A stretch of DNA of 63,385 nucleotides, counting the filler, from Octopus bimaculoides (Eukaryota), in assembly GCF_001194135.2 (NCBI RefSeq). It is 6 parts of 5 records of this genome, joined end to end, with 100 filler letters (N's around TTAATTAATTAA, not from the genome) between each part and the next. Parts side by side here need not be neighbours in the genome. Positions count along the whole stretch, not along the records: positions 39,518 to 61,619 come from NC_068984.1; 5 more parts are not named here. The stretch is one strand, 5' to 3'. Made by a program: the position numbers and the translations under genes. Position 1 is the stretch's first letter. Each line of letters starts with the position of its first letter. Positions 39,958 through 61,619 of this stretch are shown here, piece after piece. The notes below the pieces were generated by a model. It had not been told where the DNA came from. It did not search any database and saw only the letters and a program-made list of their open reading frames with translations.

Positions 39958-40025
39958 TTAACACTGGCTGACAGCATTTTCTGAAGTGCCACATAGAGTT
40001 TTCACTTTTGTCTGTTCACACTGAT
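39958..40025 (-). CDS. Candidate terminal exon G of the tandem-VFT receptor: (N)QCEQTKVKTLCGTSENAVSQC*
   Basis: Acceptor ttttgtcttacag; the phase-1 frame required by exon F is the longest open one and ends in TAA; no clear AATAAA downstream; could be chance. Confidence 0.35.
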
Positions 40026-40339
40026 CTGTAAGACAAAATTTTATTGTGAGCTTAATGAAATGAATAAATAACCAAGAGCTAAATTAATAATGCTTTCAAA
40101 TTTTGACACAAAGCCACCAATTTTAGAGAGACGGTTAGTTAATTACATTGAATCCAGTATTAAACTGGTACATATTTTTTTTGATGCTGAAAGGATGAAA
40201 CACAAAGTCAACTTTGGCAGAATTTGAACTCAGAATGTAAAAGGCTAGAGGAAAAGCTACCCAGCAGTTGTCTGACATTCTAACAATTCTTCCATCTCAC
40301 CATTTAAATTTTAATAATAATAATAATAATAATAATAAT

Positions 40340-40766
40340 CTGTCAAGACCTACCAAAAACTGAGCAAATATAAAGATCTTGAAATAGAAATTAGCAAAAT
40401 GTGGAATCTGAAGACAAAAACAATACCTATTGTCATAGGTGCCCTGGGAATGACAGCGAAACGGGCTGATTACTACCTAGCTCAGATACCAGGAAACCCC
40501 AAAATGGCTGAAGTTCAAAAGATAGTGCTCATGGGAACTGCCCATATCCTACGTAAAATACTGTCTATGTGATCTCAAATTTTAAAACAAAAACATAATT
40601 TTCTTATGGTTTCTTAAACATTCACTAGAACAAAACTGTACAAATCCAAATATATGGTACCCTAGGCATAACACCTACATGAACTTCTAACTTGTTGTTT
40701 CTTGAGGTCTCTGGGTGAGACTTGGATCCAACTTGTACAAATGCAAAACAAAAGTCAAACATAAAA
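40340..40766 (+). mobile_element. Young Dong/R4-like LINE 3' end in (TAA)n
   Basis: KLSKYKDLEIEISKMWNLKTKTIPIVIGALG...GTAHILRKILSM* (RLE C-terminus); TAA repeats on both sides. Confidence 0.85.
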
Positions 40767-41164
40767 TAATAATAATAGTAATTATTATTATTATTATTAT
40801 TATTATAGTAATAGTAATAACAATGATAAGAGTGTAAACCACCACAAGTCTTAATTGAAAGATTGCCATCTGACCAAAATACACAAAGGCCTGAAGAAAT
40901 AAGAAATTCTAATGAACCTGATAAAGACAGCTAGGAAAGTGAGAGAGCAAAAGTATTTGAAGAACACAGAGAGTCTATGATGGAAATGAAGTAGAAAAAT
41001 CTGAATCCATTAAGAGTCGTAAGACATACAAGTATGAATGATAGAGAAATACTTCATAAACTCTGAAATACCAATCAAAATGAAAAAAAAACAAAACAAA
41101 TTACAGTTATCCACTATGTAACAAAAGAAATCATACAAGTATTAAAAGCTGATCTTACTGAGTT

Positions 41165-43727: not shown

Positions 43728-43980
43728 TTTTCATTCTTGATATAAAAGCTCCTCCAGCCACAATAAGAATAATCACAAGTATGAACGCTCCTATAGCGAA
43801 AATAAGTCCAGTATGATCAAATGGCAATTTGGGTTCTTTCGTGATTGTGCTGTTATCGCAGCAATCCATATTTTCAGCACACTCAACTTTCAATTCAGAT
43901 ATTTCCTCTCTCTTATGATTATAAAGCTTCATTCTAGTTTTATCAATGGTAAGACCACTTTCTTGGCTAAATGAACCAAT
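43728..43980 (-). CDS. Exon F: end of VFT2, 3-Cys linker and TM helix (IGSFSQESGL...ECAENMDCCDNS...GLIFAIGAFILVIILIVAGGAFISRMK)
   Basis: Acceptor tttcag at 43981, donor gtaaga at 43727; phase 0 start matches exon E; ends in phase 1. Confidence 0.85.
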
Positions 43981-44203
43981 CTGAAACATAAAGAAGTTTA
44001 TAGCAGAATAAGTTAAAAATAATGTAAACTTGAAATTTGTATTCAATTTAATTGTTCATTAAGAGGAAATACATAATACACATGTAAATGGAGAAATGTT
44101 CACTTCTATGAAAAAGAGCAGAGGGAAATAAGTCACAGAATTCTATCATGTTGGTGGAGTTTTGAGAAAAATGAGTTAATGATGCAATATAAGCCAGATG
44201 CAA

Positions 44204-44390
<187 letters not shown>

Positions 44391-45796
44391 CAATGCCTGG
44401 ATGCAGTACGGATGCCCGGATGCAGTACTAATGCTCAGATGCAGTGTAAATGCCCACATGCAGTACCAGGCAGTGGTTCTCATGGCTTCTGATCTTAACT
44501 GATTGGAAGTGTTATCATGTACATTGTTTTGTCTTGGTATAAAAGATGGGCTACAGCAAATATTCTGCATAATACCACAGATTTGCTTGTCAGTTGTTTG
44601 ACCTTAACCAGTTGAGCATGTCCCTTGGTGGCTGACGATATGTGCATCTCTGATCATGAGCAAATGATAGATAAAGAATACACTGTAACAGTGTTATAAC
44701 AAAATAAAATAGAAACAGCAGCAGTAACAAACATGTAACGAACCAACAATCAATATTTCCAACACACTAACTTGAACTGTAAACTGTACCTGGACTTCAA
44801 AGACCAAACTACAAACTGCTAACTATGTCAGACTGCTACTATTTATATGTAGTGGTCTTGTCAGAGGGTGTCGTACTCTCGCCACAACAGTTACCCAACA
44901 GGGTGCATAACTCAGAGATCAGTGAGTCTCTCCAGGTCAAGCTGCTACTTCTCCACATTGAGAGGTCAAAGTTCCAGTGCTACAGACATGATTAGAATGT
45001 CACAAGAAAGAATTGCAAGATGAACCAATGAGCAAAAGACCAAGGGGTAGACCAAAAATGAGATGGTTGTATACTATCTGTAGTAGCACTTGGGAATTCA
45101 GCCAGAATGTCAAATGATGGCTGCTTCTGAGAGGATCCTATGGAAGAGCACTCTAACCCCATGACCCAATACTAGTATAATAGGCACAGAAAGTGAATGG
45201 ATGAATGGATTACTACAGAATGATATATTACACTGCATTTATGAGAACTTTTAACAGAACACTTACGTATTTTACTAATCATCATCTTTATCATCAATTG
45301 TTGAACAATACTGACTCAAATCGTAGGACTCGATGGTCTGATTACCCAGTTTCAATGATGTATGAGTGACCAAGATCACAACATTTCCCTGAACAAGAAT
45401 GCCAGTCTGTCACAAGATTACTCATTTATAGCTGAGTAGATTGGTTCAACATTACGTGAAGCATCATGTTCAAGAACACGCTACACTGCCCAGTCTGCCA
45501 TTTGAAACCAGTCTTGCAATTGTGAGTGCAACAACCTAACCACTTGGCCATGCATCTTATTTTACTAAGCCAACTATGAAATATCTATAATTAAAAGTGG
45601 CCATTCATTTAAAATAACTTCAATATAATCCTGTAACTTCAAACACTACTATTTTAGATATTATCTTGTATTCTTCAACAAATCATTTTAATCTGTCTTA
45701 GACTTCTTGGTTGGAAAATATTTGCCAGCACCAGAATAAAATAGCTGTATAGGAAATGTTATAGTGATATTTTTTAAAATAGATAAGAAAAAATTT

Positions 45797-48180
45797 GCCA
45801 ATGTTCTGCGCCATGAGGACTAAAGACTTGAGGTATTTCGTGTTGCAAGACAGTGTGTGAGAGATAATTGTGATGTCGTGGGAGAGAAATGTGTTCGCAT
45901 GGATGATGGTACGCTTGCACTAAACGAGACTGCAAAGAAAGAGGTATGGAGACGCCACTATGAAAGGTTGCTCAATAAAGAAAATGAATGGGAGGAATAG
46001 AGTCTGCCGAATGTCGACGCAACAGAGAGACCAGCGATTCGAGTTGACAGTACTATGGTAGATAAAGCTATTAAGAGTATGAAGACAGGGAAAGCCCCCG
46101 GCCCTTCATGAATCACTGCAGAATGCTCAAAATATCTGGCAGTGTCGGCTATAGCCTAGTCACCCGTATTGTTAACCAGGTGATACATGAAGGAGTCATA
46201 CCCAATGACTGGTGTAGCAGCACCATAGTCAACTGCTACAAAGGTAAAGGTGACGCTTTAGATACAAATAATTACAGAGGTATCAAGTTGTTAGATCAGG
46301 TAATGAAAGTCATGGAGAGGGTCATAGCCCAACTAATTAGGGAGAGAGTCAGTTTAGATGAGATGCAGGGAAAAGCACCACTGATGCTATATTTCTGATA
46401 AGACAGCTGCAGCAGAAATACCTAGCCAAGGATAAACTTCTGTACCTAGCTTTCGTTGACATGGGGAAAGCCTTTGACAGGGTCCCCCGATCCCTTATCT
46501 GGTGGTCAATGAGGAAACTAGGGATAGAAGAATGGTTAGTGAGAGCTGTGTGAGCCATGTACAGAGACGCTGTCAGTAAGGTGAGGGTTGGCAACGAGTA
46601 CAGTGAAGAATTCCGGGTAGAGGTAGGGGTCCACCAAGGTTCAGTCCTCAGCCCCCTCCTATTTATCATAGTCCTCCAGGCGATAACAGAGGAATTCAAG
46701 ACAGGATGCCCTTGGGAGCTCCTCTATGCTGATGACCTTGCACTAATTGCTGAGTCACTATCAGGACTGGAGAAATTTCAGGTGTGGAAGCAAGGACTAG
46801 AATTGAAGGGCCTTAGAGTCAACCTAGCTAAAACCAAAATCCTAATAAGTAGGAAGGTAGAAAAAACACGAACCCCTTCAGGTAGATGGCACTGCTCGAT
46901 TTGTAGAAAAGGCGTAGGTAGAAACTCTATAAGATGCACCCAGTGCAAGCTATGGACACATAAGAGGTGCAGCAATATCAAAGGAAGGTTAACTAGGAAG
47001 TTAGTTTTTGTATGTAGCAGATGTTCAGGAGCAATAAACACTGTAAATGTGCAGAAAACAACTTCTGCCACGTTCCAGGGAGAAAAACTAGACGTAGTTG
47101 ATAGCTTCCATTACCTAGGTAACCAAGTTAGTAGCAGGGGAGGGATGCGCTGAAAGTGTAGCTACTAGAATAAGAATAGCCTGGGCAAAGTTCAGAGAGC
47201 TCTTACCTCTGCTGGTGACAAGGGGCCTCTCACTCAGAGTAAAAGGCAGACTGTATGACGCATGTGTACAAACAGCCATGCTTCATGGCAGTGAAACATG
47301 GGCCATGACTGCTGAGGACATGTGTAAGCTCGCAAGGAATGAAGCCAATATGCTCCGATGGATGTATAATGTCAGTGTGCATACTAGACAGAGTGTTAGT
47401 ACCTTGAGAGAAAAGTTGAACTTACGAAGCATCAGTTGTGGTGTGCAAGAGAGACGATTGCGCTGCTATGGTCATGTAGCAAGAATGGATGAGGATAGCT
47501 GTGTGAAAAAGTGCCACACCCTAGCAGTTGAGGGAACCTGTGGAAGAGGTAGGCCCAGGAAGACCTGGGATGAGGTGGTGAGGCACGACCTTCGAACATT
47601 GGGCCTTACCGAGGCGATGACTTTTGACCGAGACCTCTGGAAATATGCTGTGCATGAGAAGACCCGGCAAGCCATGTGAGACCTAAATCTAAGGCCTCAG
47701 CCAGCCCACTTCTGCATACCTTCCTTCATTGGACACTAAACTCCGCTTGCGAAGACCTGTTGAAGCAAGTGAAATCGAAATTGAATTAGATTTGACGACT
47801 GGCACCCATGCCAATGTCGTCTCCTTCATTAGACACGAAATTCGGCTTGCGAAGACCTGTTGGTCCAAACAAAAGTGAAATCGTCATAGCACCTGTGCCC
47901 AGCATCGCCTCCCTGGCACTTGTGCTAGATGGCATGTGTGAAGACATTCGAGTGAGATCGTTGCCAGTACCGCCTGACTGGCCTTCGTGCCGGTGGCACA
48001 TAAAAGCACCCACTACACTCTCGGAGTGGTTGGCGTTAGGAAGGGCATCCAGCTGTAGAAACTCTTCCAAAATCAGATTGGAGCCTGGTGCAGCCATCTG
48101 GTTTCACCAGTCCTCAGTCAAATCGTCCAACCCATGCTAGTATGGAAAGCAGACGTTAAACGACGATGATGATGATGATG
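45797..48180 (+). mobile_element. 5'-truncated RTE-clade LINE with a PHD-like Cys/His insert and (GAT)n tail
   Basis: RT motifs KAFDRVP, GVHQGSVLSPLLF, LLYADDL, YLG; CSICRKGVGRNSIRCTQCKLWTHKRC...VCSRC; stops and frameshifts. Confidence 0.92.
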
Positions 48181-48244
48181 TTATTTTACATTTTAATGTG
48201 AAACAAAAATTACAAAAATAGCAATATTTAAGTAAACTACTTAC

Positions 48245-49469
48245 TTTTTTGTATGTATATTTCCCATCTTCATATTGGACATTATGGAACTGAAAACCTA
48301 TCAGTCCATTTCCATGAGAATCAAACATTTTCACAGCATCTAATGAGTTTAATATCTCAGTTTCTTTTATGGTTAAAACCAATTCTTCAGCTTTGCTTGA
48401 AAATTCTTCACACATTTTTCCACTGCATTTTTCATTAATTAATTTCTTTAACCCATTATGTATTGCATAAACTGCATTCATTGTTTGAACAATTCTGTGA
48501 TTATTTACATACAAATCAATATCGTTGTCAGAAAAAGTTTTCTTAATGCATGTAGATGCTTTTTTTGATGGATCACACATATACTGGTTCCAAAAATACT
48601 TAAAGTATGGGTTTTTTAAGTGGTTCAAACTTGCATCTTTCTCTTTTAAATATTTTTTGAAACTTATTCCCTCTTTTAAAAGAGCTCGTTTTGAACTATC
48701 AACAGTTATGATAATAGAGCCAGCAAACACATGGCCGTAACTTAAAATCAAATTGTTCTTCCCCCATGCATCACTCCCAATAAAAGTAAAAAAGTTATGC
48801 ATTTTCCTTTGATTCAAAGATTCAAGAAGATCTACAGTTCGGGAACTGGTGCCAAAGTATATGATAACTTTAATATTTTTAATCAATGCCACGGAAAATA
48901 TTTCATCAAATTCATCATGTTTGGTTTTTATTTTACTATCAGCAATACCTTTAAATGGGAACAAACATATCTGATTCTCCTTAGCAGCCGAAAGTAAAAG
49001 CTGTTTTGCTTTTAGTCCGTAGTTGTTTGTGGCATAAATTAGCCCAACATATCGCCAATCAAAGTGTTTCAAAATTTGAATTATAGCATTTACTTGCTGA
49101 TTATCACTTGGAACTGTCCGTAGGAAATAGGGATATGAAATCCGATCATCTAGGTCTTCAGACGAAGCTGCATAGGAAATTACTGGTCTTTTCAAGAGCA
49201 TGAATACATTAGCTATAGCTTTTGTAACAGAACTTGAAAGAGAACCAACAACACCGACAATATTTGATGGAGAAATGAGTTGACAAGTACTAATATCCTT
49301 GATTTTTGTTTCACCAGACAGAATGCTTGTAATATTTGAATGTGCACGTAATGGGTTGTAGCAGTCATCCAGCAACAGAGCTCCAAGTTTAACGCTGTCA
49401 CTGATTGTTTTAAACTTGTTCACATAATACAGGAAAGCTTCTCCAGCAATTGTGTCAATGAAAGGTTTT
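48245..49469 (-). CDS. Exon E: mGluR-like Venus-flytrap domain 2 (ANF-receptor/PBP1 fold)
   Basis: 1225-nt open exon: EAFLYYVN..KLGALLLDDC, IVGVVGSLSSSV, ISYAASS..L.D...YPYFLRTVPSD, WRYV, NNYG, GSDAWG, NPYF..FW, NAVYAI; acceptor ttccag, donor gtaagt; phases 2 to 0. Confidence 0.95.
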
Positions 49470-49879
49470 CTGGAAGCAATAAAAATAAGGATTTTTTAAA
49501 AACAAATTTTTATAGACACAAATATTAGTCAAAGCAAAAGGATGGTGCCCTTGATCTATTCAAACCCTACAGACCAGTGTAGTTTATGTGGTGGATGGTT
49601 AGTCTGAACTTCTGCAGATCTTATGGTTTGGAAAGAAATCATGAGTGAAAAAGGAATTTTAGAAAGGTGTCATTCTGGAAAGGATTGAGTTAAATATTTT
49701 ATAGTGGAATTTATCAGATAAGATACTGAAAGTCTGAAGAGAAGTGAGGTTGGTATATTAGGTGGCTCTAAAAACTGTGGCAGTGGTGGTGGGGGTAGGA
49801 GCAAGGTTTAGCCCCACATCAACTCAGAATCTTGGGGTTAGTAGCCCTCGCTCTTAACCATTACACCATATCCTCATCT

Positions 49880-50055
49880 CTTAAATATATGAGGCATTGT
49901 GATAAGAGGCATTCAACAACCCCTTCGGCTTTAATCTGGAAACTTAAAGATGAAGGGATCAGTTGTGACATCAAATGGAAAATCCTCTCCAGATTCAGAC
50001 CCCATATTAACAGGTCTAAAAATTATTCAGTGTGTTTTCTTAAAAAACCTTGAGA
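49880..50055 (+). mobile_element. Penelope-like element GIY-YIG C-terminal fragment, next to a SINE D head (49826-49872, -)
   Basis: KRHSTTPSALIWKLKDEGISCDIKWKILSRFRPHINRSKNYSVCFLKK resembles the PLE pattern T.LS..IW.LK...W.IL...Y...C.LC..EK. Confidence 0.6.
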
Positions 50056-50183
50056 ACCTCCGGCAAATACATATTATGGTTTTGTTCCACAGACAATAGT
50101 TCTGGTTACTTTTGGGTATCCTCTCATATAATGCATGGAAAGTATATATTGTTACTAAATAATCTTAAGTAAAAATGACTAAC

Positions 50184-50410
50184 CTTACATCACCACAACC
50201 AAAACCTTGACCTCTGTCATGAAGTGAGAAGATGCCTAATATTAAGATGTTTCCTGATACGTACACAACATTATCATCATTAAATGATAGACTTTCAGGA
50301 CAAGCTTTGGAATATTTTGAAGTGAGAGTTGCAAATGATGATAGATTATCATTCATCTTTATCGCAGAGGATTCCAATTGCAAACTATCATTTGAGAAAT
50401 ATTCGCCAAC
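50184..50410 (-). CDS. Exon D: inter-VFT linker and start of VFT2 (VGEYFSNDSLQL...GNILILGIFSLHDRGQGFGCGDVR)
   Basis: Acceptor tttcag, donor gttagt; GNILILGIFSLH...C matches mGluR GD..LG.LF..H...C; phase 0 to 2, AG+A gives Arg with exon E. Confidence 0.92.
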
Positions 50411-50694
50411 CTGAAATATATACAACAAAATTAATGTTAACAACAATTTCAAATGATCTTTATAATATATTTGTTTTAGTTGAAAGTTTCTCATTTATCT
50501 CATTTATCATCTTACATATTGACTCAGCTGCAGAAAGATATGGTTTCTACTGTGTCAAAGCAAATCACATCTAAATGCTTAATGTTCAACCCATCTCAAT
50601 GGATGACAAATATCATCCACCTATGTAAACCCCACTACATTCCTCACACAATCAAAGCATTCACTCTCAAAACCCCAAAGATTTATTAGTAGCT

Positions 50695-50732
<38 letters not shown>

Positions 50733-51580
50733 TATCATCATCATCATCATCATCATTTAACGTCTGCTTTCCATGCTAGCATGGGTTGGACGATTTGACT
50801 GGGGACTGGTGAACCAGAGGGCTATACCAGACTCCAATCTGATCTGGCAGAGTTTCTACAGCTGGATGCCCTTCCTAATGCCAACCACTCCGAAAGTGTA
50901 GTGGGTGCTTTTTACATGCCATCGGCACGAGGGCCAGTCCGNNNNNNNNNNNNNNNNNNNNNNNNNNNNNNNNNNNNNNNNNNNNNNNNNNNNNNNNNNN
51001 NNNNNNNNNNNNNNNNNNNNNNNNNNNNNNNNNNNNNNNNNNNNNNNNNNNNNNNNNNNNNNNNNNNNNNNNNNNNNNNNNNNNNNNNNNNNNNNNNNNN
51101 NNNNNNNNNNNNNNNNNNNNNNNNNNNNNNNNNNNNNNNNNNCAGTCATCGAATTTGGTTCAGTTTCGAATTCACTTGCCCCAACAGGTCTTCGCAAGCC
51201 GAGTTTAGTGTCCAATGAAGGAAGGTTGGCATGGGTGCCAATCATCGAATTTGGTTCGATTTCGATTTTGATTTCACTTGCCTCAACAGGTCTTCGCAAG
51301 CACGGTTTTGTGTCCAAAGAAGGAAAGGTACACATAAGTGGGCTGGCTACACCACTGGTAAAGGCCATGGATTATGGTCTCACTTGGCTTGCCAGGTCTT
51401 CTCACGCACAGCATATTTCCAAAGGTCTCGGTCACTAGTCATTGCCTCAGTGAGGCCTAATGTTCAAAGGTCGTACTTCACCACCTCATCCCAGGTCTTC
51501 CTGGGTCTACCTCTTCCACAGGTACCCCTCAACCATTTGGCTGTGGCACTTTTTCACACAGCTATCCTCTTCCATTCTCG
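50695..51580 (-). mobile_element. RTE LINE 3' end, inverted relative to 45797-48180
   Basis: (ATC)n tail followed by the reverse complement of 47520-48180; middle hidden by the N gap 50942-51142. Confidence 0.88.
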
Positions 51581-52845
51581 CCAAATGACAGAAAATGCTA
51601 CATACAAGAAAAGAAGAGGTTATACATCATTACCAAGTAGGAGGCCTTTCACTACCACCACAATGACTCAAGAACAGACAGACACCTTTCTCACCTCTCA
51701 AATTGCAGTTGAATTTTTACAATTTGTGTGTTCAGTACAAAAATCTTTACTGAAAAATTTCCTTTTTGTCAAGATGGCTCTGTGAGAAATACTTATACTG
51801 ATAAAAGTATCACATTTACCATTTACTTTGCTTCCAACTTCACATCATCAGTAGCAGTATTTTCCACCTGCTTTTCCTTGCTGGTATGGGTTGGATGGCT
51901 TTTTTCCTGAGGCTGAGTTGGATGGCTGAGTGACTTTCTAACCACTAACTCTTTTTGATGCCTCATGCAACATACAGAGACACAGTGTGCCTATCCTAAA
52001 CCCAGGACACACACACACACAATATAATGCTTCTAACTCTTCACTACACACATAAAAAAAGAGTTCTCTCAGATTCTGCTTCTTCATTCCATATGTCTCA
52101 CTACTTGTTTCAACACCATACTTGTTTAATCACCTCAGCCTCAATGTGACTAAATCTCATAAATTCCTTGCATTCCTCAAATCTTCTGTTACCTTCGATT
52201 GCTCTGTTATCCTCAAACCTCCCGCTAACCTCATTATCTTCAAACTTTCAAATCTTTGCTCATTGGTATTTTTTAGCAAAGTGCATTCTGATCCCCAGTC
52301 TTAGGATAACCTCTTTACAAGTCTCAGAGTTACTGAAAATTATCTCGAGCACTGTCATTCTTCTTTTGATTAAGCCTAGCCACAGTCAAATGACTAAAAA
52401 AAATAAAAGAATAATCTAGAGCTAGATTTTGGCAGTACCAAAATCTTTGATTCTTCTCTCACTACAATAAAAAACACTTGGCAGTGCATTTTATTCCCAA
52501 GACCAACAACTATATTTAATTTACACACTAACCTTGAGCCAAAGAAGGAGTTTTCACAGGCTTACTCCATCTGCTAGAAATTGCAGCTAAATCTTGCCCA
52601 AATCCTACCCAGCTAGATGTAGATTGGTTTGTTAGGGTAGGGTGAGAGAAAGGTTTTACCATATAGTATTATTCTAAAAATTAACAATCACTTCATTGAA
52701 ACCTTGAAGCCACAATTCAAAACAATGTGAATAAATATGCATTATGCTTGACACACGAGGTAATGTAGTTTTGTATACCCATAAAGACGGTATAGGTACA
52801 ACTTTTGATGAGGGTTAACTTGATGTTAAATAATAACATACTAAC

Positions 52846-53571
52846 CTTTTGGAAAATGCTTTTTTTTACTAAATACACATTCAAAATGGCTGCCATGGAG
52901 TTTTCTTTTAAGCCAAGTGCACTTCTAGAAAAACAATCTGGAACAATTTGGTCGTCAGTAAGAACACTTCTCAGGTTTTCAGGATTTAAGTATGTTGAAC
53001 ATTTAAGCCTCTTGCATTCCTTTTGTTTAGCAAGTGCAATGCCATAAACAGACTCCATGATAGCTCTTGTATGAATTATCCTTTGTCCATTGTGAGGAAT
53101 ATTTTTTGAACTGATTTTTGTTACATCCAGGATATTTCGTACCCATTGATATAATGTATCATTTTTAAAATGTGTTAAAGTTTTTATATCCCTCAGATAA
53201 TCTTCAAATTCCTTGTTGTTAAGGCTTGATGAAGTTACTACATAGGAACCTTCCATATTAGAATGGTTTTTAAGCTCATTTTGTAGTTTCCCAGAAATAT
53301 CTAAAATTATCCAGGTCATATCTTTGATATGAAGAAAGGAATCAATATTTTGTATTTCGCCAACATATATTATTCCAGAGGAGAAGCTTTCACGAAGAAA
53401 CCTTATTTCATCTAATGCATTCTTAGAAAATGCTCTTTTCATTGAAAAACAGATACCATCACTTTTTGCTTTTGCCTCTAACATGTTAGCCATTTCAATT
53501 CCATATTCATTATCAGAGTAGACAATTCCAGGAGAAACCCATTTCAATCTCTTTAAAAGCATTATTGCAGC
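52846..53571 (-). CDS. Exon C: C-terminal part of degenerate VFT1
   Basis: 726-nt open exon AAIMLLKRLKWVSPGIVYSDNEYG...DGICF...MESVYGIA...; acceptor ttctag, donor gttagt; phase 0 to 0. Confidence 0.9.
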
Positions 53572-54715
53572 CTAGAAACAAAAGAAATAAAGATTAAAAT
53601 GGTTCTTAAGACTTTCAGGTTAAAATTAATGTCAGTTTTGATTTTGATTAACATTGTCTAAAGCAAAATTCCATCAAATAAACAAAGTTTTGGCACAAGT
53701 CATGAATATCTAACAAACGCAAGTAATTCTTGTACAAAGAATTTGAGCTCATGGTATTCTGTATTGCTTGAATGAAATAAATATAACAATGTACTTTGGA
53801 ATGGATGTTGGGGTACCCAGCACAATTAGAAATAAAACCTGTCTCTTAGTGAGAAATCAACATACCAGACTAGAGATCGCACAACTGATGAGTACCTCCT
53901 TTACGTTGACAAATACAAAGTAAACTTGTTTATTCTTAACTAAGAATTTCTCAAGAAATTGGCTGGTTAGAAATATGGTATGGTACCTCAGCATCTTGAT
54001 ATAAACTTATGGTTGAGTAATAAAGAAGTTTACTTCATAATCATTAGGTCCCAGGTTCAGTTCCACTATGTAATACCCTGAGCTAGTGTCTGTTGGATAG
54101 ACAGACACTATGTGGAAGTCTAACAGACTGACTGTACATGTAATTTGAAAGTCCATCCTCATCACATTTTAGCATCACAGTGGTTCACCTTGTGAATGAT
54201 ATTAACAATGCATGTGTCTTTGATCATTAATTTAAAAAAGAAGTTGGTTGGCTAATTGAATGCTCGTTGTTGAAACCAAGAGAGGATCCATCATTAACTC
54301 AAAATACATGTTATCTAGACTAACACTATCCTCATTCAAATTCTCTCTAACTCAGGCTACCACTGAATCTGGCCAGTTTGAACATAAAACAGGTGGAATA
54401 TTTTGGCTGGATATGGCCAGTTTAAACCAAACCTTAATGCCTTGGGGGAGGGGGGTAAAAAAACACATTTACATAATGTAGTCCTGGGTTCCCTGTGCCT
54501 AGGGAGAAAGATGGATTAGCGAGGGTTCAAATGTCTTTAATTATAGGCTTGCTTGATCAGTGCTGACCTGGACTCAACAGCAACAACAACCTGATTGAAC
54601 AAGTTAAACTTGCAAAGGGTTTTAAAACATTTTGCTTATTTGCACAAGATGATACTTTATAGAATAGCTTCTTTTTCTGATATCCCCTGAAAATTATAAA
54701 ATAAATTATAATTAC

Positions 54716-54873
54716 CTTAACTTGAGTTTCCATGGGTAAAGCAAAAGATATAAAATTCTTATAAGACGGAAATGCCATCTGTTCAAATAAAGGGCTAATT
54801 ACTGGTAATGAAATATATTTGGTTGTTTCAAGTAGAGATTCAGTCACAGAATAGTCGCCAAGGGAAATAATTG
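54716..54873 (-). CDS. Exon B of VFT1 (AIISLGDYSVTESLL...LPVISP...FALPMETQVK)
   Basis: Acceptor ttcccacag, donor gtaatt; phase 1 to 0; colinear with mGluR GVIG..SS..S / P.ISY / R..P.D..Q. Confidence 0.85.
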
Positions 54874-55816
54874 CTGTGGGAATAAAACACAAAATTCACT
54901 CTTTAAACTGAACGTGATTATTTTATTTATCCTTTTTTTGTTTTTATTATTAGATTTTAGGGGCTAATGCAGTTTCGCACCTTTCCTTGAAAAATGCATT
55001 TTATTTTTTTAAAATTTTTCGGATTCCTATGTTTTAGATGTCGGAAATTAAGAATATGCAAAGAAAAATACTGGTACTTAATTTATTGACCCCAAAAGGA
55101 CGAAAGGCAAAGTTGACTTCATTCATAAAATATATTTGTCAACTAAATGTGGCAGTCCTATAGTGGACGATGTTACTGTTGTTTTTAGCCCCAGGAAGGC
55201 ACTCATATCTAGCTATTTCTTTATGCACCTATCTTATTGAATTTAAAACTTTCAAAACATGGTTTCTTGCATATCCAGAATCTCCATCATCTAAAACATA
55301 GGGAAAAAAAGTCTCAAAAAGGTTCAAAAGTTAAAGNNNNNNNNNNNNNNNNNNNNNNNNNNNNNNNNNNNNNNNNNNNNNNNNNNNNNNNNNNNNNNNN
55401 NNNNNNNNNNNNNNNNNNNNNNNNNNNNNNNNNNNNNNNNNNNNNNNNNNNNNNNNNNNNNNNNNNNNNNNNNNNNNNNNNNNNNNNNNNNNNNNNNNNN
55501 NNNNNNNNNNNNNNNNNNNNNNNNNNNNNNNNNNNNNNNNNNNNNNNNNNNNNNNNNNNNNNNNNNNNNNNNNNNNNNNNNNNNNNNNNNNNNNNNNNNN
55601 NNNNNNNNNNNNNNNNNNNNNNNNNNNNNNNNNNNNNNNNNNNNNNNNNNNNNNNNNNNNNNNNNNNTTCCAAACTTCCAAGATATGTCTGGCCATTGGA
55701 AAATGTTATCTTATTTAGAAACAGGTGAGTTGTTGGTGGCAGTAATAACATCCAGCTGTAGAAAATCCACCTCAGCAAATTCTGTCCAATCCCAAGCATA
55801 AAAAAGTTGACATTAA

Positions 55817-56276
55817 CTCTTTTGTTACTGTATTCATTTTACTGTATTCTATGTTTCTTTCAATTAATTTTAAATATAACAAAGAATTTAGTAAAATAAC
55901 TTGGTTATCATTAAGCTAGTGTTAGGAACATAAATTGTGACTAAGGTTTGATGGAAGATTTTAATTCAAAACTTATGAAAACAAGACATTTGTACTACAG
56001 AGCCAGAGGTGGTTTCAGTCGGGTTGGTATCAAACAGTTAAATTAATCATATTAACCCTTTTGTTACCATATTTCTGTTGAGATGCTCTCTGTTTCTTTC
56101 AATTACTTTAAATATAACAAAGAATTTAGTAAAATAACTTAGTTATCATTCAGCTATTGATAGGAACAAAAATTGTGACTAAGGTTTAGTGGAAGATTTT
56201 AATTCAAAACTTATGAAAACAAGACATTTGTACTACAGAGCCAGAGGTGGTTTTGGCCAGGTTGGTAATGAAAGGG
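55817..56276. mobile_element. Two tandem piggyBac-like MITE copies (55817-56037, 56056-56276)
   Basis: TTAA flanks; CCCTTT...AAAGGG termini (degenerate in copy 1); about 220-bp similar bodies. Confidence 0.7.
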
Positions 56277-57354
56277 TTAAATGATGGTGATGATATCTAA
56301 AAATTTTATGATTAAAAACCCAGCTTCAACTTAGAATCTTGTTAAAAGTGGAGGTATTATAATAGAAAAAAGATTGCATTAAGAAGGATAACAATTTATA
56401 TAATCCAATTGGTAATCTGTTTGATATAAGACTTAATATCTAAACAGCCAAACTATATTAAATCTTTTTCTCTTTCACTCATTTCAGTCATTAGACTAAG
56501 GCCATGCTGGGGCACTGCCTTGAAGAATTTTTAGTCAAATTAATTGAACCACGTAATTTTTTTTTTCTTTAAAGCCTAGTGCCTATCCTATCGATCTCTC
56601 TTGCCAAACTGCTAAGTTACGGGGATGTAAACACACCAACAACGGTTGTCATGTGGTGGTGGGGGACAAACACACTCACACACACGCACACACACACACA
56701 TCACACAAACACACACGTGTGCGCACACACATACACACACATATATATACAACAAGCTTCTTTCAGTTTCCGTCTACCAAATCCACTCACAAGGCTTTGG
56801 TTGGCCTGAAGCTATCGGAGAAAACACCTGCCCAAGGTTCCATGCAGTGGGACTGAACCTAGAATCATGTGGTCGAGAAGCAAGCATCTTACTACACAGC
56901 CAGATCTGTATAAATTTTTATTGTATTTTTCATAAAATAAACACAAGGAAGCTGATTATTGAAGAAGCTGTGCTTAACAACCACATGGTTTCAGATTCAG
57001 TCCCACTTCACATCACCTTGGACAAGTGTCTCCTACTATAGTTCCTGGATGATAAATACCTTGTGGGCAGATGGAAACTGTGTGGAAGCTTGTAACATAT
57101 GAACGCTTGTTACATGTACCCCACTGCTTCACAATTGGTGTTGGTTTCTCTATGTACCCCATAACTTAGCAGTTTGTTAAAGAAACCAATAGAACAAGCA
57201 GCAGACTTTAAAGAAATGAGAACCAGGGTTGATTTGTTCAACTAAAATTCATCAAAGCAGTGACCCTACACGGCTGCAGTCTAACGACTGCAGTCTAACG
57301 ACTGAAACAAATAAAAGATGAAAGACGGACTATGTTTTCAAAATTCTAGCTTAC

Positions 57355-57486
57355 CTGTGTATGGAGTGCCTTTCTTTGTGCTTGGTTCACCACAAAGACC
57401 ATCTTGAGAATAAGGAGATTTGTATATATCATATACATAATTAGCTGCAATCTCTGGTTCTCCACAAATATCAAATATGGTAAATT
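57355..57486 (-). CDS. Exon A of VFT1 (FTIFDICGEPEIAANYVYDIY...LCGEP...TPYT); most 5' exon visible
   Basis: Acceptor ttgattaacag, donor gtaagc; phase 1 to 1; I.DIC matches mGluR I.DTC. Confidence 0.8.
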
Positions 57487-58589
57487 CTGTTAATCAAATA
57501 AAAAGAATTCATTGTCATCACTATTCACTCCCCGAATTCTGATTAATTTTATTATGATCTAGTACAGCAATTAATTCCCTTTTTTTTTTTTTTTACTGAT
57601 TTAGCCTTGAGCAGGGGTTTTTAAAAGTGGATGGTAGTTCCCCCATAACAGCATTGCGAGTCCATAAAGGGAAGCAATTACCAAGGTGAAACTGGGGATA
57701 GAGTTAGATGCTTTTTAGAGAAAGTCATGATTTTTCTCAAAGATAACATATTTAAAGCAAAATACAATATTTATATTGTATATACATTATCAAAAATATT
57801 TTTGTCAATACTGGAATGAGATGGACATTGTGAACAAAAAAACAAATCACTGATGCTGCACCAAGGTCTATGTAATTTCATTATATAAGTCTTTAGCAGT
57901 CTTTTAAAAATTTAACATTTGGAACACTAGTCCATGCAAATAGCTAAAAACAGATACATGTAGGATGGGATGATATAAGGAAATATGGCTAATAAACTAC
58001 AATGCAAAATTCATTTGTTTAATTAAAATAATTGCTGAATTTTTGAGGGGTGGGATGTGCAAAATATGTGAAGGTAAAATGTAAAATGCCACTCAGTGAA
58101 AGGTTGAGAACCATTAGTCTAGTGGAAGAGGCTGTGCTCATGAGATCATTGCAAGCCCTCCAAGAAGGAGTGAGAGGATGAGGCACAGCTGTTTGGCCTG
58201 GTTGACTGGACATTTGACCTGTTTGGCCTGGTTGACTGGACAATTTGGTCCTTTTTAGTGCTGGAATCACACACACTTGCACATGCACATAGAAATATAC
58301 ACATACAGATAAAATTAATGGAGGTCACAAAAGTTACCTTTTGCTAAAGGTAAGAGTTAAACTAACTCAAATCTACAAATGCACTGTCTTAAGTGATTGA
58401 CAAAGGGATCATGATTTTGGATTTTGATGGAGACCATATTAATCTTCATAAGTGGCTCTTAATTCCTAGGGTTAAACTCAACTACCTCTGTCAGTCTTAT
58501 AAGAAAAACCATTGAAAATGTGCGCTGATTTCCAAAATGGTAAAAGTGTAAGCAACAAATTAAAAAAGGGTGGCTTATTAATAATCAGT

Positions 58590-58800: not shown

Positions 58801-58861
58801 TCCAATTAGCAATTGGATGGTTGCTTACACATACAGATATGTTTATATATTATTATTATTA

Positions 58862-59253
58862 TTTTATGTTTGACTTTTGTTTTGCATTTGTACAAGTTGG
58901 ATCCAAGTCTCACCCAGAGACCTCAAGAGACAACAAGTTAGAAGTTCATGTAGGTGTTATGCCTAGGGTACCATATATTTGGATTTGTACAGTTTTATTC
59001 AAGTGAATGTTTAAGAAACCATAAGAAAATTATGTGTTTGCTTTAAAATTTGAGCTCACATAGACAGTATTTTACGTAGGATATGGGCAGTTCCCATGAG
59101 CACTATCTTTTGAACTTCAGCCATTTTGGGGTTTCCTGGTATCTGAGCTAGGTAGTAATCAGCCCGTTTCGCTGTCATTCCCAGGGCACCTATGACAATA
59201 GGTATTGTTTTCGTCTTCAGATTCCACATTTTGCTAATTTCTATTTCAAGATC

Positions 59254-59256
<3 letters not shown>
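58862..59256 (-). mobile_element. Young Dong/R4-like LINE 3' end in (TAA)n, inverted twin of 40340-40766
   Basis: Nearly identical sequence; same KDLEIEISKMWNLK...RKILSM peptide. Confidence 0.85.
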
Positions 59257-59289
<33 letters not shown>

Positions 59290-59291
<2 letters not shown>

Positions 59292-59600
59292 TGGCTTCCG
59301 AGCCGGTGGCACGTAAATAACACCATTTGAGCATAATCGTTACCAGCGTCGCCTTCCTAGCACTTGTGCCGGTGACACATGAAAAGACATTCAAACGAGG
59401 TTGTTGCCAGTGCCGCCGGAACGGCTCCTATGCAGGTGGCACATAAAATACACCATTTTGAGCATGGCCATTGCCAATACCGCCTGACTGACCTTCGTGC
59501 TAGTGGCACGTAAAAGCACCCACAACACTCTTGAGGTGCTTGGCATTAGGAAGGGCATCCAGCTGTAGAAACTCTGCCAAATCAGATTGGAACCTGGCGG
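59290..59600 (+). mobile_element. RTE LINE 3' UTR fragment
   Basis: Matches 47880-48090. Confidence 0.75.
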
Positions 59601-59769
59601 TTTCATTACATATCATATCTTTTCAACTTGTTTATTTACATGTAATTATAGGTCAACTATGAATGTTGTCTATTTTTACTGTCGGTTTTGAATTAATACG
59701 ACCCTGAAAAGATACAATATTCCATATTTTATAATATGCATGAATCGATCTGGATATTGNNNNNNNNNN

Positions 59770-61619
59770 CGATTTGACTGAGGACTGGTGAACCAGATGG
59801 CTACACCAGGCTCCAATCTGATTTGGCAGAGTTTCTACAGCTGGATTCCCTTCCTAACACCAACCACTCTGAGAGTGTAGTGGGTGCTTTTACGTGCCAC
59901 CGGCATGAAGCCCAGTCAGGAAGTACTGGCAACGGCCACACTTCAAATTGTGTATTTTACGTGCCACCTGCACAGGAGCCAGTCCAGCGGTACTGGCAAC
60001 GAACTCGCTCGAATGTCTTTTCACATGCCACTGGTACAAGTGCCAGGAAGGCAACGTTGGTAACGGTCACGCTCAAATGGTGCTATTTACGTGCCACCGC
60101 CACGAAAGCCAGACAGCTGGTGCTCTGGCAACGATCACGCTCAGACGGTGCTCTTAGTGATTTACTGGTACTGGTACCATCACAATTTTGCTTTTGCTTG
60201 CCCCAACAGGTCTTTGCAAGCCGAGTTTAGTGTTCAATGACGATGTTGGCATGGGTGCCAGTCTACAAATTTAGTTCGATTTCGATTTCAATTTCACTTG
60301 CCTCAACATGTCTTCGCAAGCGGAGTTTAGTGTCCAAAGAAGGAATGTTACGCATAAGTGGGCTGGTTACATCCCTGGCAGAGGCCTTGGATTTTGGTCT
60401 CACTTGACTTGCCGGGTCTTCTCACGCACAGCATATTTCCAAATGTCTCGGTCAAAAGTCATTGCCTCGGTGAGGCCTAAAGTTCGTAGGTCGTGCTTCA
60501 CCACCTCATCCCAGGTCTTCCTGGGCCTGCCTCTTCTACGGGTTCCCTCAAGCGCTAGGGTGTGGCACTTTTTCACACAGCTATCCTCATCCATTCTCGC
60601 CACATGTCCATACCAGCGCAATCGTCTCTCTTGCACACCACAACTGATGCTTCTTAGGTTCAACTTTTCTCTCAAGATACTTACACTCTGTCAGGTATGC
60701 ACACTGACATTACTCATCCACCGGAGCATGCTGGCTTCATTCCTTGTGAGCTTACGCATGTCCTCAGCAGTCAAGGCCCATGTTTCACAGCCATGTAGCA
60801 TTGCTGTTCGTACACATGCGTCATACAGTCTGTCTTTTACTCTGAGCAAGATACCCTTTGTCGCCAGCAGAGGTAAGAGCTCTCTGAACTTTGCCCAGGC
60901 TATTCTTATTCTAGCAGCTACACTTTCAGCACACCCACCCCCACTACTAACTTGGTCACCCAGATAGGGGAAGCTATCAACTACCTCTAGTTTTTGTCCC
61001 TGGAATGAGACAGAAGTTGTTTTCTGCATATTTTCAGTGTTTATTGCACCTGAACGTCTGCCACATACAAAAACTAACTTCCTAGTTAACCTGCCTTTGA
61101 TATTGCTGCACCTCTTATGTGTCCATAGCTTGCACTGTGTGTCCATAGCTTGTACACACAACTTATGTGCCCATAGCTTGCATCTTATAGAGTTTCTACC
61201 TACACCTTTTCTACAGATCAAGCAGGGTCATCTACCTGAAGGGGTCTGTGTTTTGTCTACCTTCCTACTTATTAGAACTTTGGTTTTAGCTAAGTTGACC
61301 CTAAGGCCCTTCAATTCTAGTCACTGCTTCCACACCTGAAACTTATCCTCTAGTTCTGATAGTGATTCAGCAATTAGTGCAAGGTCATCAGCATAGAGGA
61401 GCTCCCAGGGGCATTTTGTCCTGAATTCCTCTGTTATCGCCTGGAGGACTATGATAAATAGGAGGGGGCTGAGGACAGAACCTTGGTAGACCCCTACCTT
61501 TACCCAGAATTCTTCACTGTACTCATTGCCAACCCTCACCTTACTGACAGCGTCTCTGTACATGGCTCGCACAGCTCTCACTAACCATTCTTCTATCCCT
61601 AGTTTCCTCATTGATCACC
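59770..61619 (-). mobile_element. RTE LINE copy, same family as 45797-48180, running into a scaffold gap
   Basis: GVYQGSVLSPLLF, LLYADDL, PHD-like insert, GRPRKTW C-terminus, 3' UTR. Confidence 0.9.

What the first reader, a model, noticed from the sequence alone, without database searches (positions are those of the whole stretch)
47520..51580. Inverted RTE ends tightly flank a symmetric two-exon module encoding the whole second flytrap
Exons D+E total 1452 nt (484 codons), phase 0 at both ends. A plus RTE tail ends about 64 nt from the exon E donor, and a minus RTE tail starts about 285 nt from the exon D acceptor, with several hundred complementary bases. Inverted intronic repeats are known to promote back-splicing and skipping. 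Skipping would join FQK to IGSF in frame, leaving only the degenerate VFT1 plus TM. The circle would be a stop-free, multiple-of-three loop. The duplex is also a likely ADAR substrate in a lineage known for heavy A-to-I editing.
Basis: partly seen in the sequence, partly recalled or inferred. Interest (0 to 1): 0.7.

Follow-up and report, generated by a model that had tools for sequence, protein, structure and literature searches.

The report
Inverted retrotransposon copies flank receptor exons
Two young retrotransposon fragments, inserted in opposite directions in the introns around two exons of an octopus receptor-like gene, could pair in the RNA, but such pairs are common in this gene and nothing yet shows that this one does anything.

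Summary
The piece is Octopus bimaculoides, gene LOC106872190, on the minus strand. Exons D (50410..50184) and E (49469..48245) total 1452 nt, are phase 0 at both ends, and encode a complete mGluR-type Venus flytrap domain.

A sense LINE fragment (50698-51586) lies 287 nt upstream of exon D. An antisense LINE copy (45774-48177) lies 67 nt downstream of exon E. About 620 aligned bases are complementary at 83-90%. In a fold of the 3980-nt pre-mRNA segment, 561 base pairs join the two arms.

The N gap lies inside the upstream arm, in a variable sub-repeat region of the element. It is intronic, and its two sides are colinear.

New here: O. sinensis and O. vulgaris have clean empty sites at both positions, so both arms are recent insertions in the O. 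bimaculoides lineage. Inverted repeat pairs across introns are also common in this gene: 3 of 15 intron pairs here, 8 and 7 of 15 in the orthologues.

Back-splicing, skipping and editing remain untested. The only annotated product includes D+E. Published work reports low circRNA levels in octopus and says this fits ADAR repression of circRNA formation. The likeliest reading is a chance, neutral arrangement and an ordinary instance of a known mechanism, though the species contrast makes it easy to test.

The parts
52846..53571 (-). Exon C (726 nt, phase 0-0). It encodes the C-terminal part of the divergent first VFT and ends ..SIFQK.
   Evidence: Splice sites and frame. Weak Pfam ANF_receptor match (8e-6). 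100% match to P0285.
50698..51586 (-). Upstream arm: a 5'-truncated LINE (RTE-like) fragment, sense to the gene, in intron C-D. It carries the RT C-terminus, the 3' UTR and a (GAT)n tail, and it includes the N gap 50942-51142. It is an insertion specific to the O. bimaculoides lineage.
   Evidence: blastn to the left and third copies. Alignment A1. Empty site in O. sinensis (L003 38857|38860) and O. vulgaris.
50184..50410 (-). Exon D (227 nt; starts in phase 0, ends two bases into a codon). It encodes the linker and Cys-rich lead-in and the first strand of VFT2.
49470..50183 (-). Intron D-E, only 714 nt here, against 5.1 kb in O. sinensis and 11.2 kb in O. vulgaris.
48245..49469 (-). Exon E (1225 nt; ends in phase 0), the body of VFT2. 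It contains a conserved internal GT (last exon base 49094) that the O. vulgaris gene model uses as a donor.
45774..48177 (+). Downstream arm: a 2.4-kb 5'-truncated LINE (RTE-like) copy, antisense to the gene, in intron E-F. It carries broken RT and PHD-finger reading frames, a 3' UTR of about 500 nt and a (GAT)n tail that ends 67 nt from the exon E donor. It is an insertion specific to the O. bimaculoides lineage.
   Evidence: ORFs. Pfam RVT_1 and PHD. Octopus RT homologues at 76-80%. Empty site in O. sinensis (L003 46469|46480) and O. vulgaris.
47471..48183 (+). The part of the downstream arm that is complementary to the upstream arm (50733-51589).
   Evidence: Cofold ddG -242 and -400 kcal/mol. 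561 inter-arm bp in the MFE structure.
43728..43980 (-). Exon F (starts in phase 0): IGSF.. stalk with a small Cys cluster, then a single transmembrane helix.
   Evidence: P0285.
59770..61619 (-). Third copy of the same LINE, sense to the gene, in intron 1 and cut by the edge of the piece. It is the competing partner for the downstream arm (85-93% over about 1.7 kb).
   Evidence: Exon 1 lies upstream of the piece.
59290..59597 (+). Short antisense tail copy in intron 1. It forms a local hairpin with the tail of the third copy (59806-60113; 308 nt at 84%).

Best explanation
Two independent, 5'-truncated copies of one microsatellite-tailed LINE family (RTE-like) inserted in opposite orientations into introns C-D and E-F of O. 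bimaculoides LOC106872190. Both inserted after this lineage split from the O. sinensis/O. vulgaris lineage. The gene encodes signal peptide, VFT1, VFT2 and a single transmembrane helix.

The arrangement is a chance product of a very repeat-dense genome and is most likely neutral. In the pre-mRNA the arms are predicted to form an imperfect double-stranded stem of about 0.6 kb that closes a 2.5-kb loop holding exons D and E.

Shown: the anatomy, the insertion history and the predicted pairing. Inferred: the most probable molecular consequence is clustered A-to-I editing of the intronic stem by ADAR. Editing and unwinding would keep back-splicing (a 1452-nt circle) and D+E skipping low, if they occur at all. 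There is no sign of a selected function.
For: Both arms sit at clean empty sites in two other Octopus genomes, whose flanking intron sequence is 90-93% identical. Inverted cross-intron repeat pairs are frequent in this same gene in all three species. Published annotation puts the O. vulgaris genome at about 66% repeats, with LINEs 12.9% and SINEs 11.6% (PMC13282606). The pairing potential is strong: cofold ddG of -242 and -400 kcal/mol against -9 and -18 for shuffled arms, and 561 inter-arm bp in the MFE structure. In octopus most editing falls in introns and 3' UTRs at hairpins, and circRNAs are at overall low levels (PMC9699675). The single annotated product retains D+E. The orthologues lack the arms yet keep the same D+E module, with identical splice-site sequence in the flanks examined.
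Against: No RNA data for this gene could be examined, so appreciable back-splicing or skipping is not excluded. The geometry is favourable by the published rules. The arms are 67 and 287 nt from the splice sites. Neither flanking intron holds an internal inverted competitor. Inverted repeats of 30-40 nt are enough in minigenes (PMC4201285). The compact 714-nt D-E intron would also help.
Confidence: 0.7

Rival explanations
1. The inverted arms bring the exon E donor next to the exon D acceptor and drive appreciable back-splicing. This would give a species-specific 1452-nt circular RNA with an endless reading frame.
For: Long complementary arms lie close to both splice sites. Neither flanking intron has an internal competitor. 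The circle has no stop and has in-frame ATGs. The mechanism is established in mammals and flies (PMC4201285 and PMC4617980).
Against: circRNAs are at overall low levels in octopus, which the authors call consistent with ADAR repression (PMC9699675). A longer competing partner lies in intron 1. Many exons in this gene carry similar inverted pairs, so the configuration predicts little on its own. Expression of the gene is unknown. The full-length query returned only annotated genome-derived proteins among close matches, which is weak evidence given that tool's recall problem.
Confidence: 0.17
2. The stem loops out D+E and promotes skipping, which would produce a functional isoform with VFT1, stalk and TM only, a receptor without VFT2.
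For: The C-to-F junction is in frame. Exon F begins with the same kind of motif as exon D (IGSFSQESGLTIDKTRMKL against VGEYFSNDSLQLESSAIKM), so the junction would look native. An O. vulgaris gene model already removes most of VFT2 in frame through an internal donor in exon E.
Against: No skipping isoform is annotated in O. bimaculoides, which has a single product, or in O. sinensis, whose X1 and X2 isoforms both keep D+E. VFT1 is the degenerate domain, so the product would lack the well-conserved ligand-binding module. The arms are recent and lineage-specific.
Confidence: 0.06
3. Assembly artefact: the inverted arrangement results from a mis-joined or mis-oriented contig at the N gap that lies inside the repeat.
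For: A scaffold gap lies inside the upstream arm (50942-51142), and the assembly has many gaps.
Against: The 209-nt proximal part of the upstream arm, exons D and E, and the whole downstream arm lie on one uninterrupted stretch (50941 down to 39518). Exons on both sides of the gap are in the right order and on the right strand, and match the annotated protein at 100%. Unique intron sequence on both sides is colinear with two other species.
Confidence: 0.03

Closest known systems
Inverted intronic repeats (for example inverted Alu pairs) that promote exon circularisation and skipping in mammals; the Drosophila laccase2 repeats
   Same: There are reverse-complementary transposon copies in the two introns flanking an exon block. 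The splice sites are canonical, the arms lie within a few hundred nt of the splice sites, and neither flanking intron has an internal competitor (PMC4201285 and PMC4617980).
   Different: No back-splice product has been observed. The arms come from a LINE 3' part rather than a SINE. The organism is one where circRNAs are reported at low levels and ADAR activity is high. Both arms are recent, species-lineage-specific insertions.
Intronic inverted-repeat dsRNA as ADAR hyper-editing substrates
   Same: A predicted imperfect duplex of several hundred bp, formed by oppositely oriented repeats about 2.5 kb apart in one pre-mRNA. In octopus, editing is concentrated in introns and 3' UTRs at hairpins.
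   Different: Editing at this locus was not and could not be examined here.
RTE-clade LINEs of Octopus (Petrosino et al. 2022, PMC9115989)
   Same: An RT-encoding non-LTR element that ends in a microsatellite, which that paper calls a common RTE feature. The best RT matches are in O. vulgaris and O. bimaculoides. The tail also occurs alone at many sites, as expected for extreme 5' truncation or for SINEs that share the tail.
   Different: Here a PHD-type finger sits inside the RT region and the 3' UTR is about 500 nt with internal sub-repeats. No endonuclease domain is present in these truncated copies. The clade was not established by phylogeny.
Class C GPCR ligand-binding domain (mGluR2/3 Venus flytrap)
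   Same: D+E encodes a complete bilobed VFT. mGluR3 ECD scores E = 2.6e-43. The AlphaFold model has pLDDT 80 and pTM 0.85, with target-normalised TM-scores of 0.76-0.81 to mGluR2/3 ECD chains. The SYAASS..YPYFLRTVPSD motif block is conserved.
   Different: The protein has two VFTs in tandem and a single transmembrane helix. It has no cysteine-rich NCD3G domain and no 7TM domain. It is not a GPCR.

Membership tests
Inverted-repeat-driven circRNA or exon-skipping locus | Reverse-complementary sequences in the introns on both sides of the exon block | tested here: met
   209 nt at 90.4% and 413 nt at 82.6%; 561 inter-arm bp in the MFE fold.
Inverted-repeat-driven circRNA or exon-skipping locus | Canonical acceptor upstream and donor downstream of the block | tested here: met
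   TTTCAG|G at exon D and AAAAAA|GTAAGT at exon E; confirmed by the annotated protein.
Inverted-repeat-driven circRNA or exon-skipping locus | Cross-intron pairing is not outcompeted by other partners | tested here: inconclusive
   No inverted partner lies inside either flanking intron. However, a longer partner for the downstream arm lies in intron 1, about 1.7 kb at 85-93%.
Inverted-repeat-driven circRNA or exon-skipping locus | An observed back-splice or skip junction in RNA (RNase R-resistant product) | not testable with these tools
   No RNA-seq access. The only annotated product includes D+E.
ADAR hyper-editing substrate | A long, largely uninterrupted intramolecular dsRNA | tested here: met
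   195 and 355 intermolecular bp in cofold, with ddG of -242 and -400 kcal/mol. This is a prediction only.
ADAR hyper-editing substrate | Clusters of A-to-G mismatches between RNA and genome | not testable with these tools
   No transcript reads are available.
RTE-clade LINE | Reverse transcriptase domain | tested here: met
   Pfam RVT_1, 2.8e-12, in the 198-aa ORF.
RTE-clade LINE | 3' end formed by a short tandem repeat rather than poly(A) | tested here: met
   (GAT)n at both 3' ends. This is an RTE feature according to PMC9115989.
RTE-clade LINE | Apurinic-type endonuclease N-terminal to the RT | tested here: inconclusive
   All three copies in the piece are 5'-truncated or cut by the piece's edge, so that region is absent.
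RTE-clade LINE | RT groups with the RTE clade in a phylogeny | not tested
   No transposon reference library was on hand. From memory only, the C-terminal ..GRGRPRKTWDEVV.. block resembles that of BovB-type RTEs.
Class C GPCR | ANF_receptor/VFT extracellular domain | tested here: met
Class C GPCR | 7TM_3 domain, usually preceded by an NCD3G cysteine-rich domain | tested here: not met
   Exon F gave no Pfam match and has one hydrophobic helix. The full protein P0285 carries only ANF_receptor-type domains and ends 22 residues after the RMK that follows the TM helix.

The most novel reading that the evidence does not exclude
Two recent LINE insertions have given O. bimaculoides, but not O. sinensis or O. 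vulgaris, a new RNA product from this receptor-like gene. The product would be either an abundant 1452-nt circle with an endless reading frame, translatable into repeated flytrap domains, or a regulated isoform that drops the ligand-binding VFT2. That would be a dated, species-pair-testable case of transposons creating circRNA or isoform novelty in a cephalopod despite high ADAR activity.
Probability: 0.06. Interest if true: 0.55.

Novelty: new member of a known kind. Interest (0 to 1): 0.25.

Why it matters
As it stands, this is one more exon block bracketed by inverted transposon copies in a genome where such pairs are everywhere, so it changes nothing by itself.

Its value is as a clean test case. 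The arms are long and sit next to the splice sites. The enclosed block is a self-contained, in-frame domain module. Two sequenced sister species carry the same gene with empty sites at both positions. Comparing total-RNA data across the three species would therefore show directly whether inverted repeats drive back-splicing, skipping or hyper-editing in an animal with very high ADAR activity, where circRNAs are reported to be scarce.

Separately, the host gene belongs to an uncharacterised family of animal proteins with two or more mGluR-type flytrap domains and a single transmembrane helix. That family may deserve study in its own right.

Tried and rejected
1. A protein search with D+E alone returned nothing above 41% identity, which first suggested the gene was unannotated. 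That was a recall failure of the word-indexed search. The exhaustive representative search and a longer query found the O. sinensis orthologue and the 100%-identical O. bimaculoides protein.

2. L001 and L002, fetched from those distant hits, are not orthologous and share no LINE sequence with the window. They served only to show that the VFT2 module boundaries recur, as a single exon, in a relative.

3. A search for exon 1 inside the piece found nothing. Exon 1 lies upstream, beyond a 2168-N gap.

4. A tRNA scan and an Rfam scan of the piece found no tRNA and no match near any gathering score. The few sub-threshold miRNA-family hits lie largely on simple-sequence stretches.

5. No convincing target-site duplications were seen at either insertion, only GAT/CAT microhomology with the microsatellite tail.

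6. A literature search for the gene identifiers returned nothing. A search for tandem flytrap proteins found only the bacterial EvgS sensor kinase.

7. The 3-4-kb '10-VFT' proteins from Polypterus are named as partial CASR proteins and look like merged tandem gene models, so I did not count them as real multi-VFT proteins.

8. I considered that the inverted arms might mediate genomic inversion of D+E. At 83-90% identity, and with colinear orthologues, there is no sign of that.


Full report
**Where the piece comes from.**
The piece (window 39518-61619) is identical to Octopus bimaculoides assembly GCA_001194135.2, chromosome record CM046604.1. Window coordinate c corresponds to record position c + 11272585. 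The match covers the stretch between two large N gaps. It lies inside gene LOC106872190, an 'uncharacterized protein' of 1022 aa (P0285). The gene runs on the minus strand.

I first built an exon model from the sequence alone. It matches P0285 at 100% identity over 907 aa, so the splice sites below are confirmed by the public annotation.

| Exon | Window coordinates | Note |
|---|---|---|
| 1 | upstream of the piece | |
| 2 | 57487..~57349 | |
| B | 54878..54716 | |
| C | 53571..52846 | |
| D | 50410..50184 | |
| E | 49469..48245 | |
| F | 43980..43728 | |
| last | about 40027..39958 | |

**The observation.**
- D is 227 nt and E is 1225 nt, 1452 nt together. That is 484 codons with no stop, starting and ending in phase 0, with canonical splice sites.
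- Exon C ends in phase 0 after ..SIFQK at 52846. Exon F starts in phase 0 with IGSF.. at 43980. A C-to-F join would therefore be in frame.
- Reading twice around a D+E circle meets no stop, and there are seven in-frame ATGs.
- D+E encodes a complete Venus flytrap domain:
  - Pfam ANF_receptor scores 6.6e-39 and covers profile positions 12-338 of 353.
  - The best solved relatives are mGluR3 ligand-binding domains, E = 2.6e-43, with query residues 49-484 aligned to chain residues 9-458.
  - An AlphaFold model (pLDDT 80.4, pTM 0.85) superposes on mGluR2/3 extracellular domains with target-normalised TM-scores of 0.76-0.81.
  - Only the first 45 or so residues of exon D are modelled with low confidence.
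- Exon C gives only a marginal ANF_receptor match (8e-6), so calling VFT1 'degenerate' is fair.

**The arms.**
An inverted-repeat scan and blastn show two blocks of complementarity:

| Downstream arm | Upstream arm | Identity | Length |
|---|---|---|---|
| 47976-48183 | 50939-50733 | 90.4% | 209 nt |
| 47471-47863 | 51589-51181 | 82.6% | 413 nt |

- The downstream arm is the 3' part of a 2.4-kb non-LTR retrotransposon copy on the plus strand, which is antisense to the gene. It has broken reading frames with RVT_1 and a PHD-type finger, a 3' UTR of about 500 nt, and a (GAT)n tail.
- The upstream arm is a shorter 5'-truncated copy on the minus strand, which is sense to the gene.
- The RT fragment's best relatives are O. 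vulgaris (80%) and O. bimaculoides (76%) proteins.
- The microsatellite tail fits what has been described for octopus RTE elements (PMC9115989). I could not place the RT in a phylogeny, so 'RTE' remains a plausible label rather than a tested one.

**The assembly gap.**
- The 201 N at 50942-51142 fall inside the upstream arm.
- Sequence on both sides aligns to the same element, in the same orientation and order.
- A four-way alignment of the copies shows that the gap replaces a region of variable sub-repeats. The left copy has about 112-174 nt there, and the third copy roughly 290 nt.
- Unique intron sequence on either side of the whole 50698-51586 block aligns to adjacent bases in O. sinensis and O. 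vulgaris. The block is therefore one insertion in a colinear intron.
- Nothing coding crosses the gap.
- The 209-nt proximal arm, exons D and E, and the entire downstream arm lie on one uninterrupted stretch.
- Continuity is therefore well supported. Only the true length is unknown.

**Pairing potential.**
- Cofolding gives 195 intermolecular base pairs for the proximal blocks, with ddG -242 kcal/mol relative to the separately folded arms. It gives 355 pairs for the distal blocks, with ddG -400. Shuffled controls give -9 and -18.
- I folded the 3980-nt pre-mRNA segment as one molecule with the Ns removed. In the minimum-energy structure, 561 base pairs join the two arms and close a loop that holds exons D and E.
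- Neither flanking intron contains an inverted partner of its own.

**Competitors.**
- A third copy of the element (59770-61619, sense to the gene, cut by the edge of the piece) is complementary to the downstream arm over about 1.7 kb at 85-93%.
- Exon 1 lies further upstream, so this copy is in intron 1 and is part of the pre-mRNA.
- Its tail is partly sequestered by a neighbouring antisense tail copy (59290-59597 against 59806-60113).
- Proximity favours the pair that flanks D+E, but the competitor is real.

**Comparative evidence, which is new.**
The exhaustive representative search found the O. sinensis orthologue, LOC115210858, with isoforms X1 and X2, and an O. vulgaris model. I fetched both genomic loci (L003 and L004). 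A colinear chain of unique-sequence matches at 86-97% identity runs through all the introns.
- Both species have a clean empty site at each arm:
  - Window 51587 and 50697 correspond to L003 38857 and 38860.
  - Window 48178 and 45773 correspond to L003 46469 and 46480.
  - The junction sequences confirm this.
  - Both arms are therefore insertions in the O. bimaculoides lineage, made after its split from the other two species. That split is cited as 13.3-33.5 Mya in PMC13282606.
- The orthologues carry different copies of the same family elsewhere in these introns.
- Inverted cross-intron pairs of at least 80 nt link 8 of 15 intron pairs in O. sinensis and 7 of 15 in O. vulgaris, against 3 of 15 in the window. 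For example, O. sinensis exon E alone is flanked by a 411-nt pair at 87%.
- The configuration is thus a routine by-product of repeat density, reported as about 66% repeats in O. vulgaris.

**What bears on function.**
- I had no RNA data.
- O. bimaculoides has a single annotated product, and it includes D+E. O. sinensis isoforms X1 and X2 both include D+E and differ only after exon E.
- The O. vulgaris model joins an internal GT in exon E (..PSDNQQ|GTAAAT; last exon base 49094 in the window) to exon F, in frame. That donor is conserved in all three species. This hints that VFT2 can be trimmed by splicing, but it owes nothing to the arms.
- A study of O. vulgaris found circRNAs at overall low levels, which it called consistent with ADAR repressing their biogenesis. 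It also found that most A-to-I editing lies in introns and 3' UTRs at hairpins (PMC9699675).

**Conclusion.**
The best reading is two recent, independent, probably neutral LINE insertions that create a strong potential intronic duplex. I rate hyper-editing of that duplex as the likeliest consequence. I rate appreciable back-splicing at roughly one in six, and a functional skipping isoform lower still. The locus is an ordinary member of a known class. Its one useful property is a ready-made three-species contrast, arms present against both absent.

**The host gene.**
- LOC106872190 encodes a signal peptide, a divergent VFT, a well-conserved mGluR-like VFT, a short Cys-containing stalk, one transmembrane helix and a short tail. 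It has no 7TM domain, so it is not a class C GPCR.
- Exon D and exon F begin with similar motifs (VGEYFSNDSLQLESSAIKM and IGSFSQESGLTIDKTRMKL). In full-length mGluR-like relatives the same kind of motif follows the VFT (VGSWD..LEL..). This suggests a repeated phase-0 module that arose by duplication.
- Uncharacterised relatives with two to five ANF_receptor stretches occur in scallop, limpet, Aplysia, Bulinus, a nemertean, an acorn worm and amphioxus.

Noticed in passing
window 40372-40780 and 58848-59256: A 409-nt inverted pair at 98% identity, much better than the reported arms. One copy is in the last intron and the other in intron 1, so together they bracket exons 2 to F (nearly the whole coding region) at 18 kb distance. 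It belongs to a different, apparently very young repeat family, with ..IPIVIGALG..-type ORF remnants nearby.
   Followed up: partly
window 49092-49094 (inside exon E); L004 exon E: The O. vulgaris gene model CAI9721922.1 splices from an internal GT in exon E (..PSDNQQ|GTAAAT) directly to exon F, removing most of VFT2 in frame. The donor sequence is identical in O. bimaculoides, O. sinensis and O. vulgaris. It could be a real alternative isoform or an annotation artefact.
   Followed up: partly
window 43728-57487 (whole gene); proteins P0143, P0149, P0151, P0158, P0166, P0135, P0138, P0142: The host gene belongs to an uncharacterised animal family with two or more mGluR-type flytrap domains in tandem. 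The octopus proteins (P0285, P0276) and the transcript-derived P0143 also have a single transmembrane helix and no 7TM domain. Relatives with 2-5 ANF_receptor stretches are annotated only as 'uncharacterized' in molluscs, a nemertean, a hemichordate and amphioxus. No paper in the library describes such animal proteins.
   Followed up: partly
window 49470-50183, against L003 40105-45181 and L004 42854-54056: The intron between exons D and E is 714 nt in O. bimaculoides, 5.1 kb in O. sinensis and 11.2 kb in O. vulgaris. A more distant relative (L002) has no intron there at all.
   Followed up: partly
window 50353-50410 and 43923-43980: Exon D and exon F start with similar peptide motifs (VGEYFSNDSLQLESSAIKM and IGSFSQESGLTIDKTRMKL), as does the segment after the VFT in full-length mGluR-like proteins. 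The exon boundaries are therefore offset by one motif from the domain boundaries, as expected if the VFT module was duplicated through phase-0 introns.
   Followed up: partly
window about 49790-49875, minus strand, intron D-E: A stretch that looks like a tRNA-derived SINE head (..GGTGTAATGGTTAAGAGCGAGGGCTACTAACCCCAAGATTCTGAGTTGATGTGG..). ARAGORN and Rfam did not call it.
   Followed up: no
L003 exon E/F junction; protein P0132: O. sinensis isoform X2 leaves exon E and then reads exon F in a shifted frame (..KYIYKKVNWFIWQRKWFYP, then stop). This predicts a secreted two-flytrap protein without the membrane anchor. I could not reproduce the extra bases from the genomic sequence.
   Followed up: partly
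window 55337-55667 and 59760-59769: Two further assembly gaps in the piece, of 331 N and 10 N, both intronic (intron 2-B and intron 1). The second abuts the 3' end of the third LINE copy.
   Followed up: no
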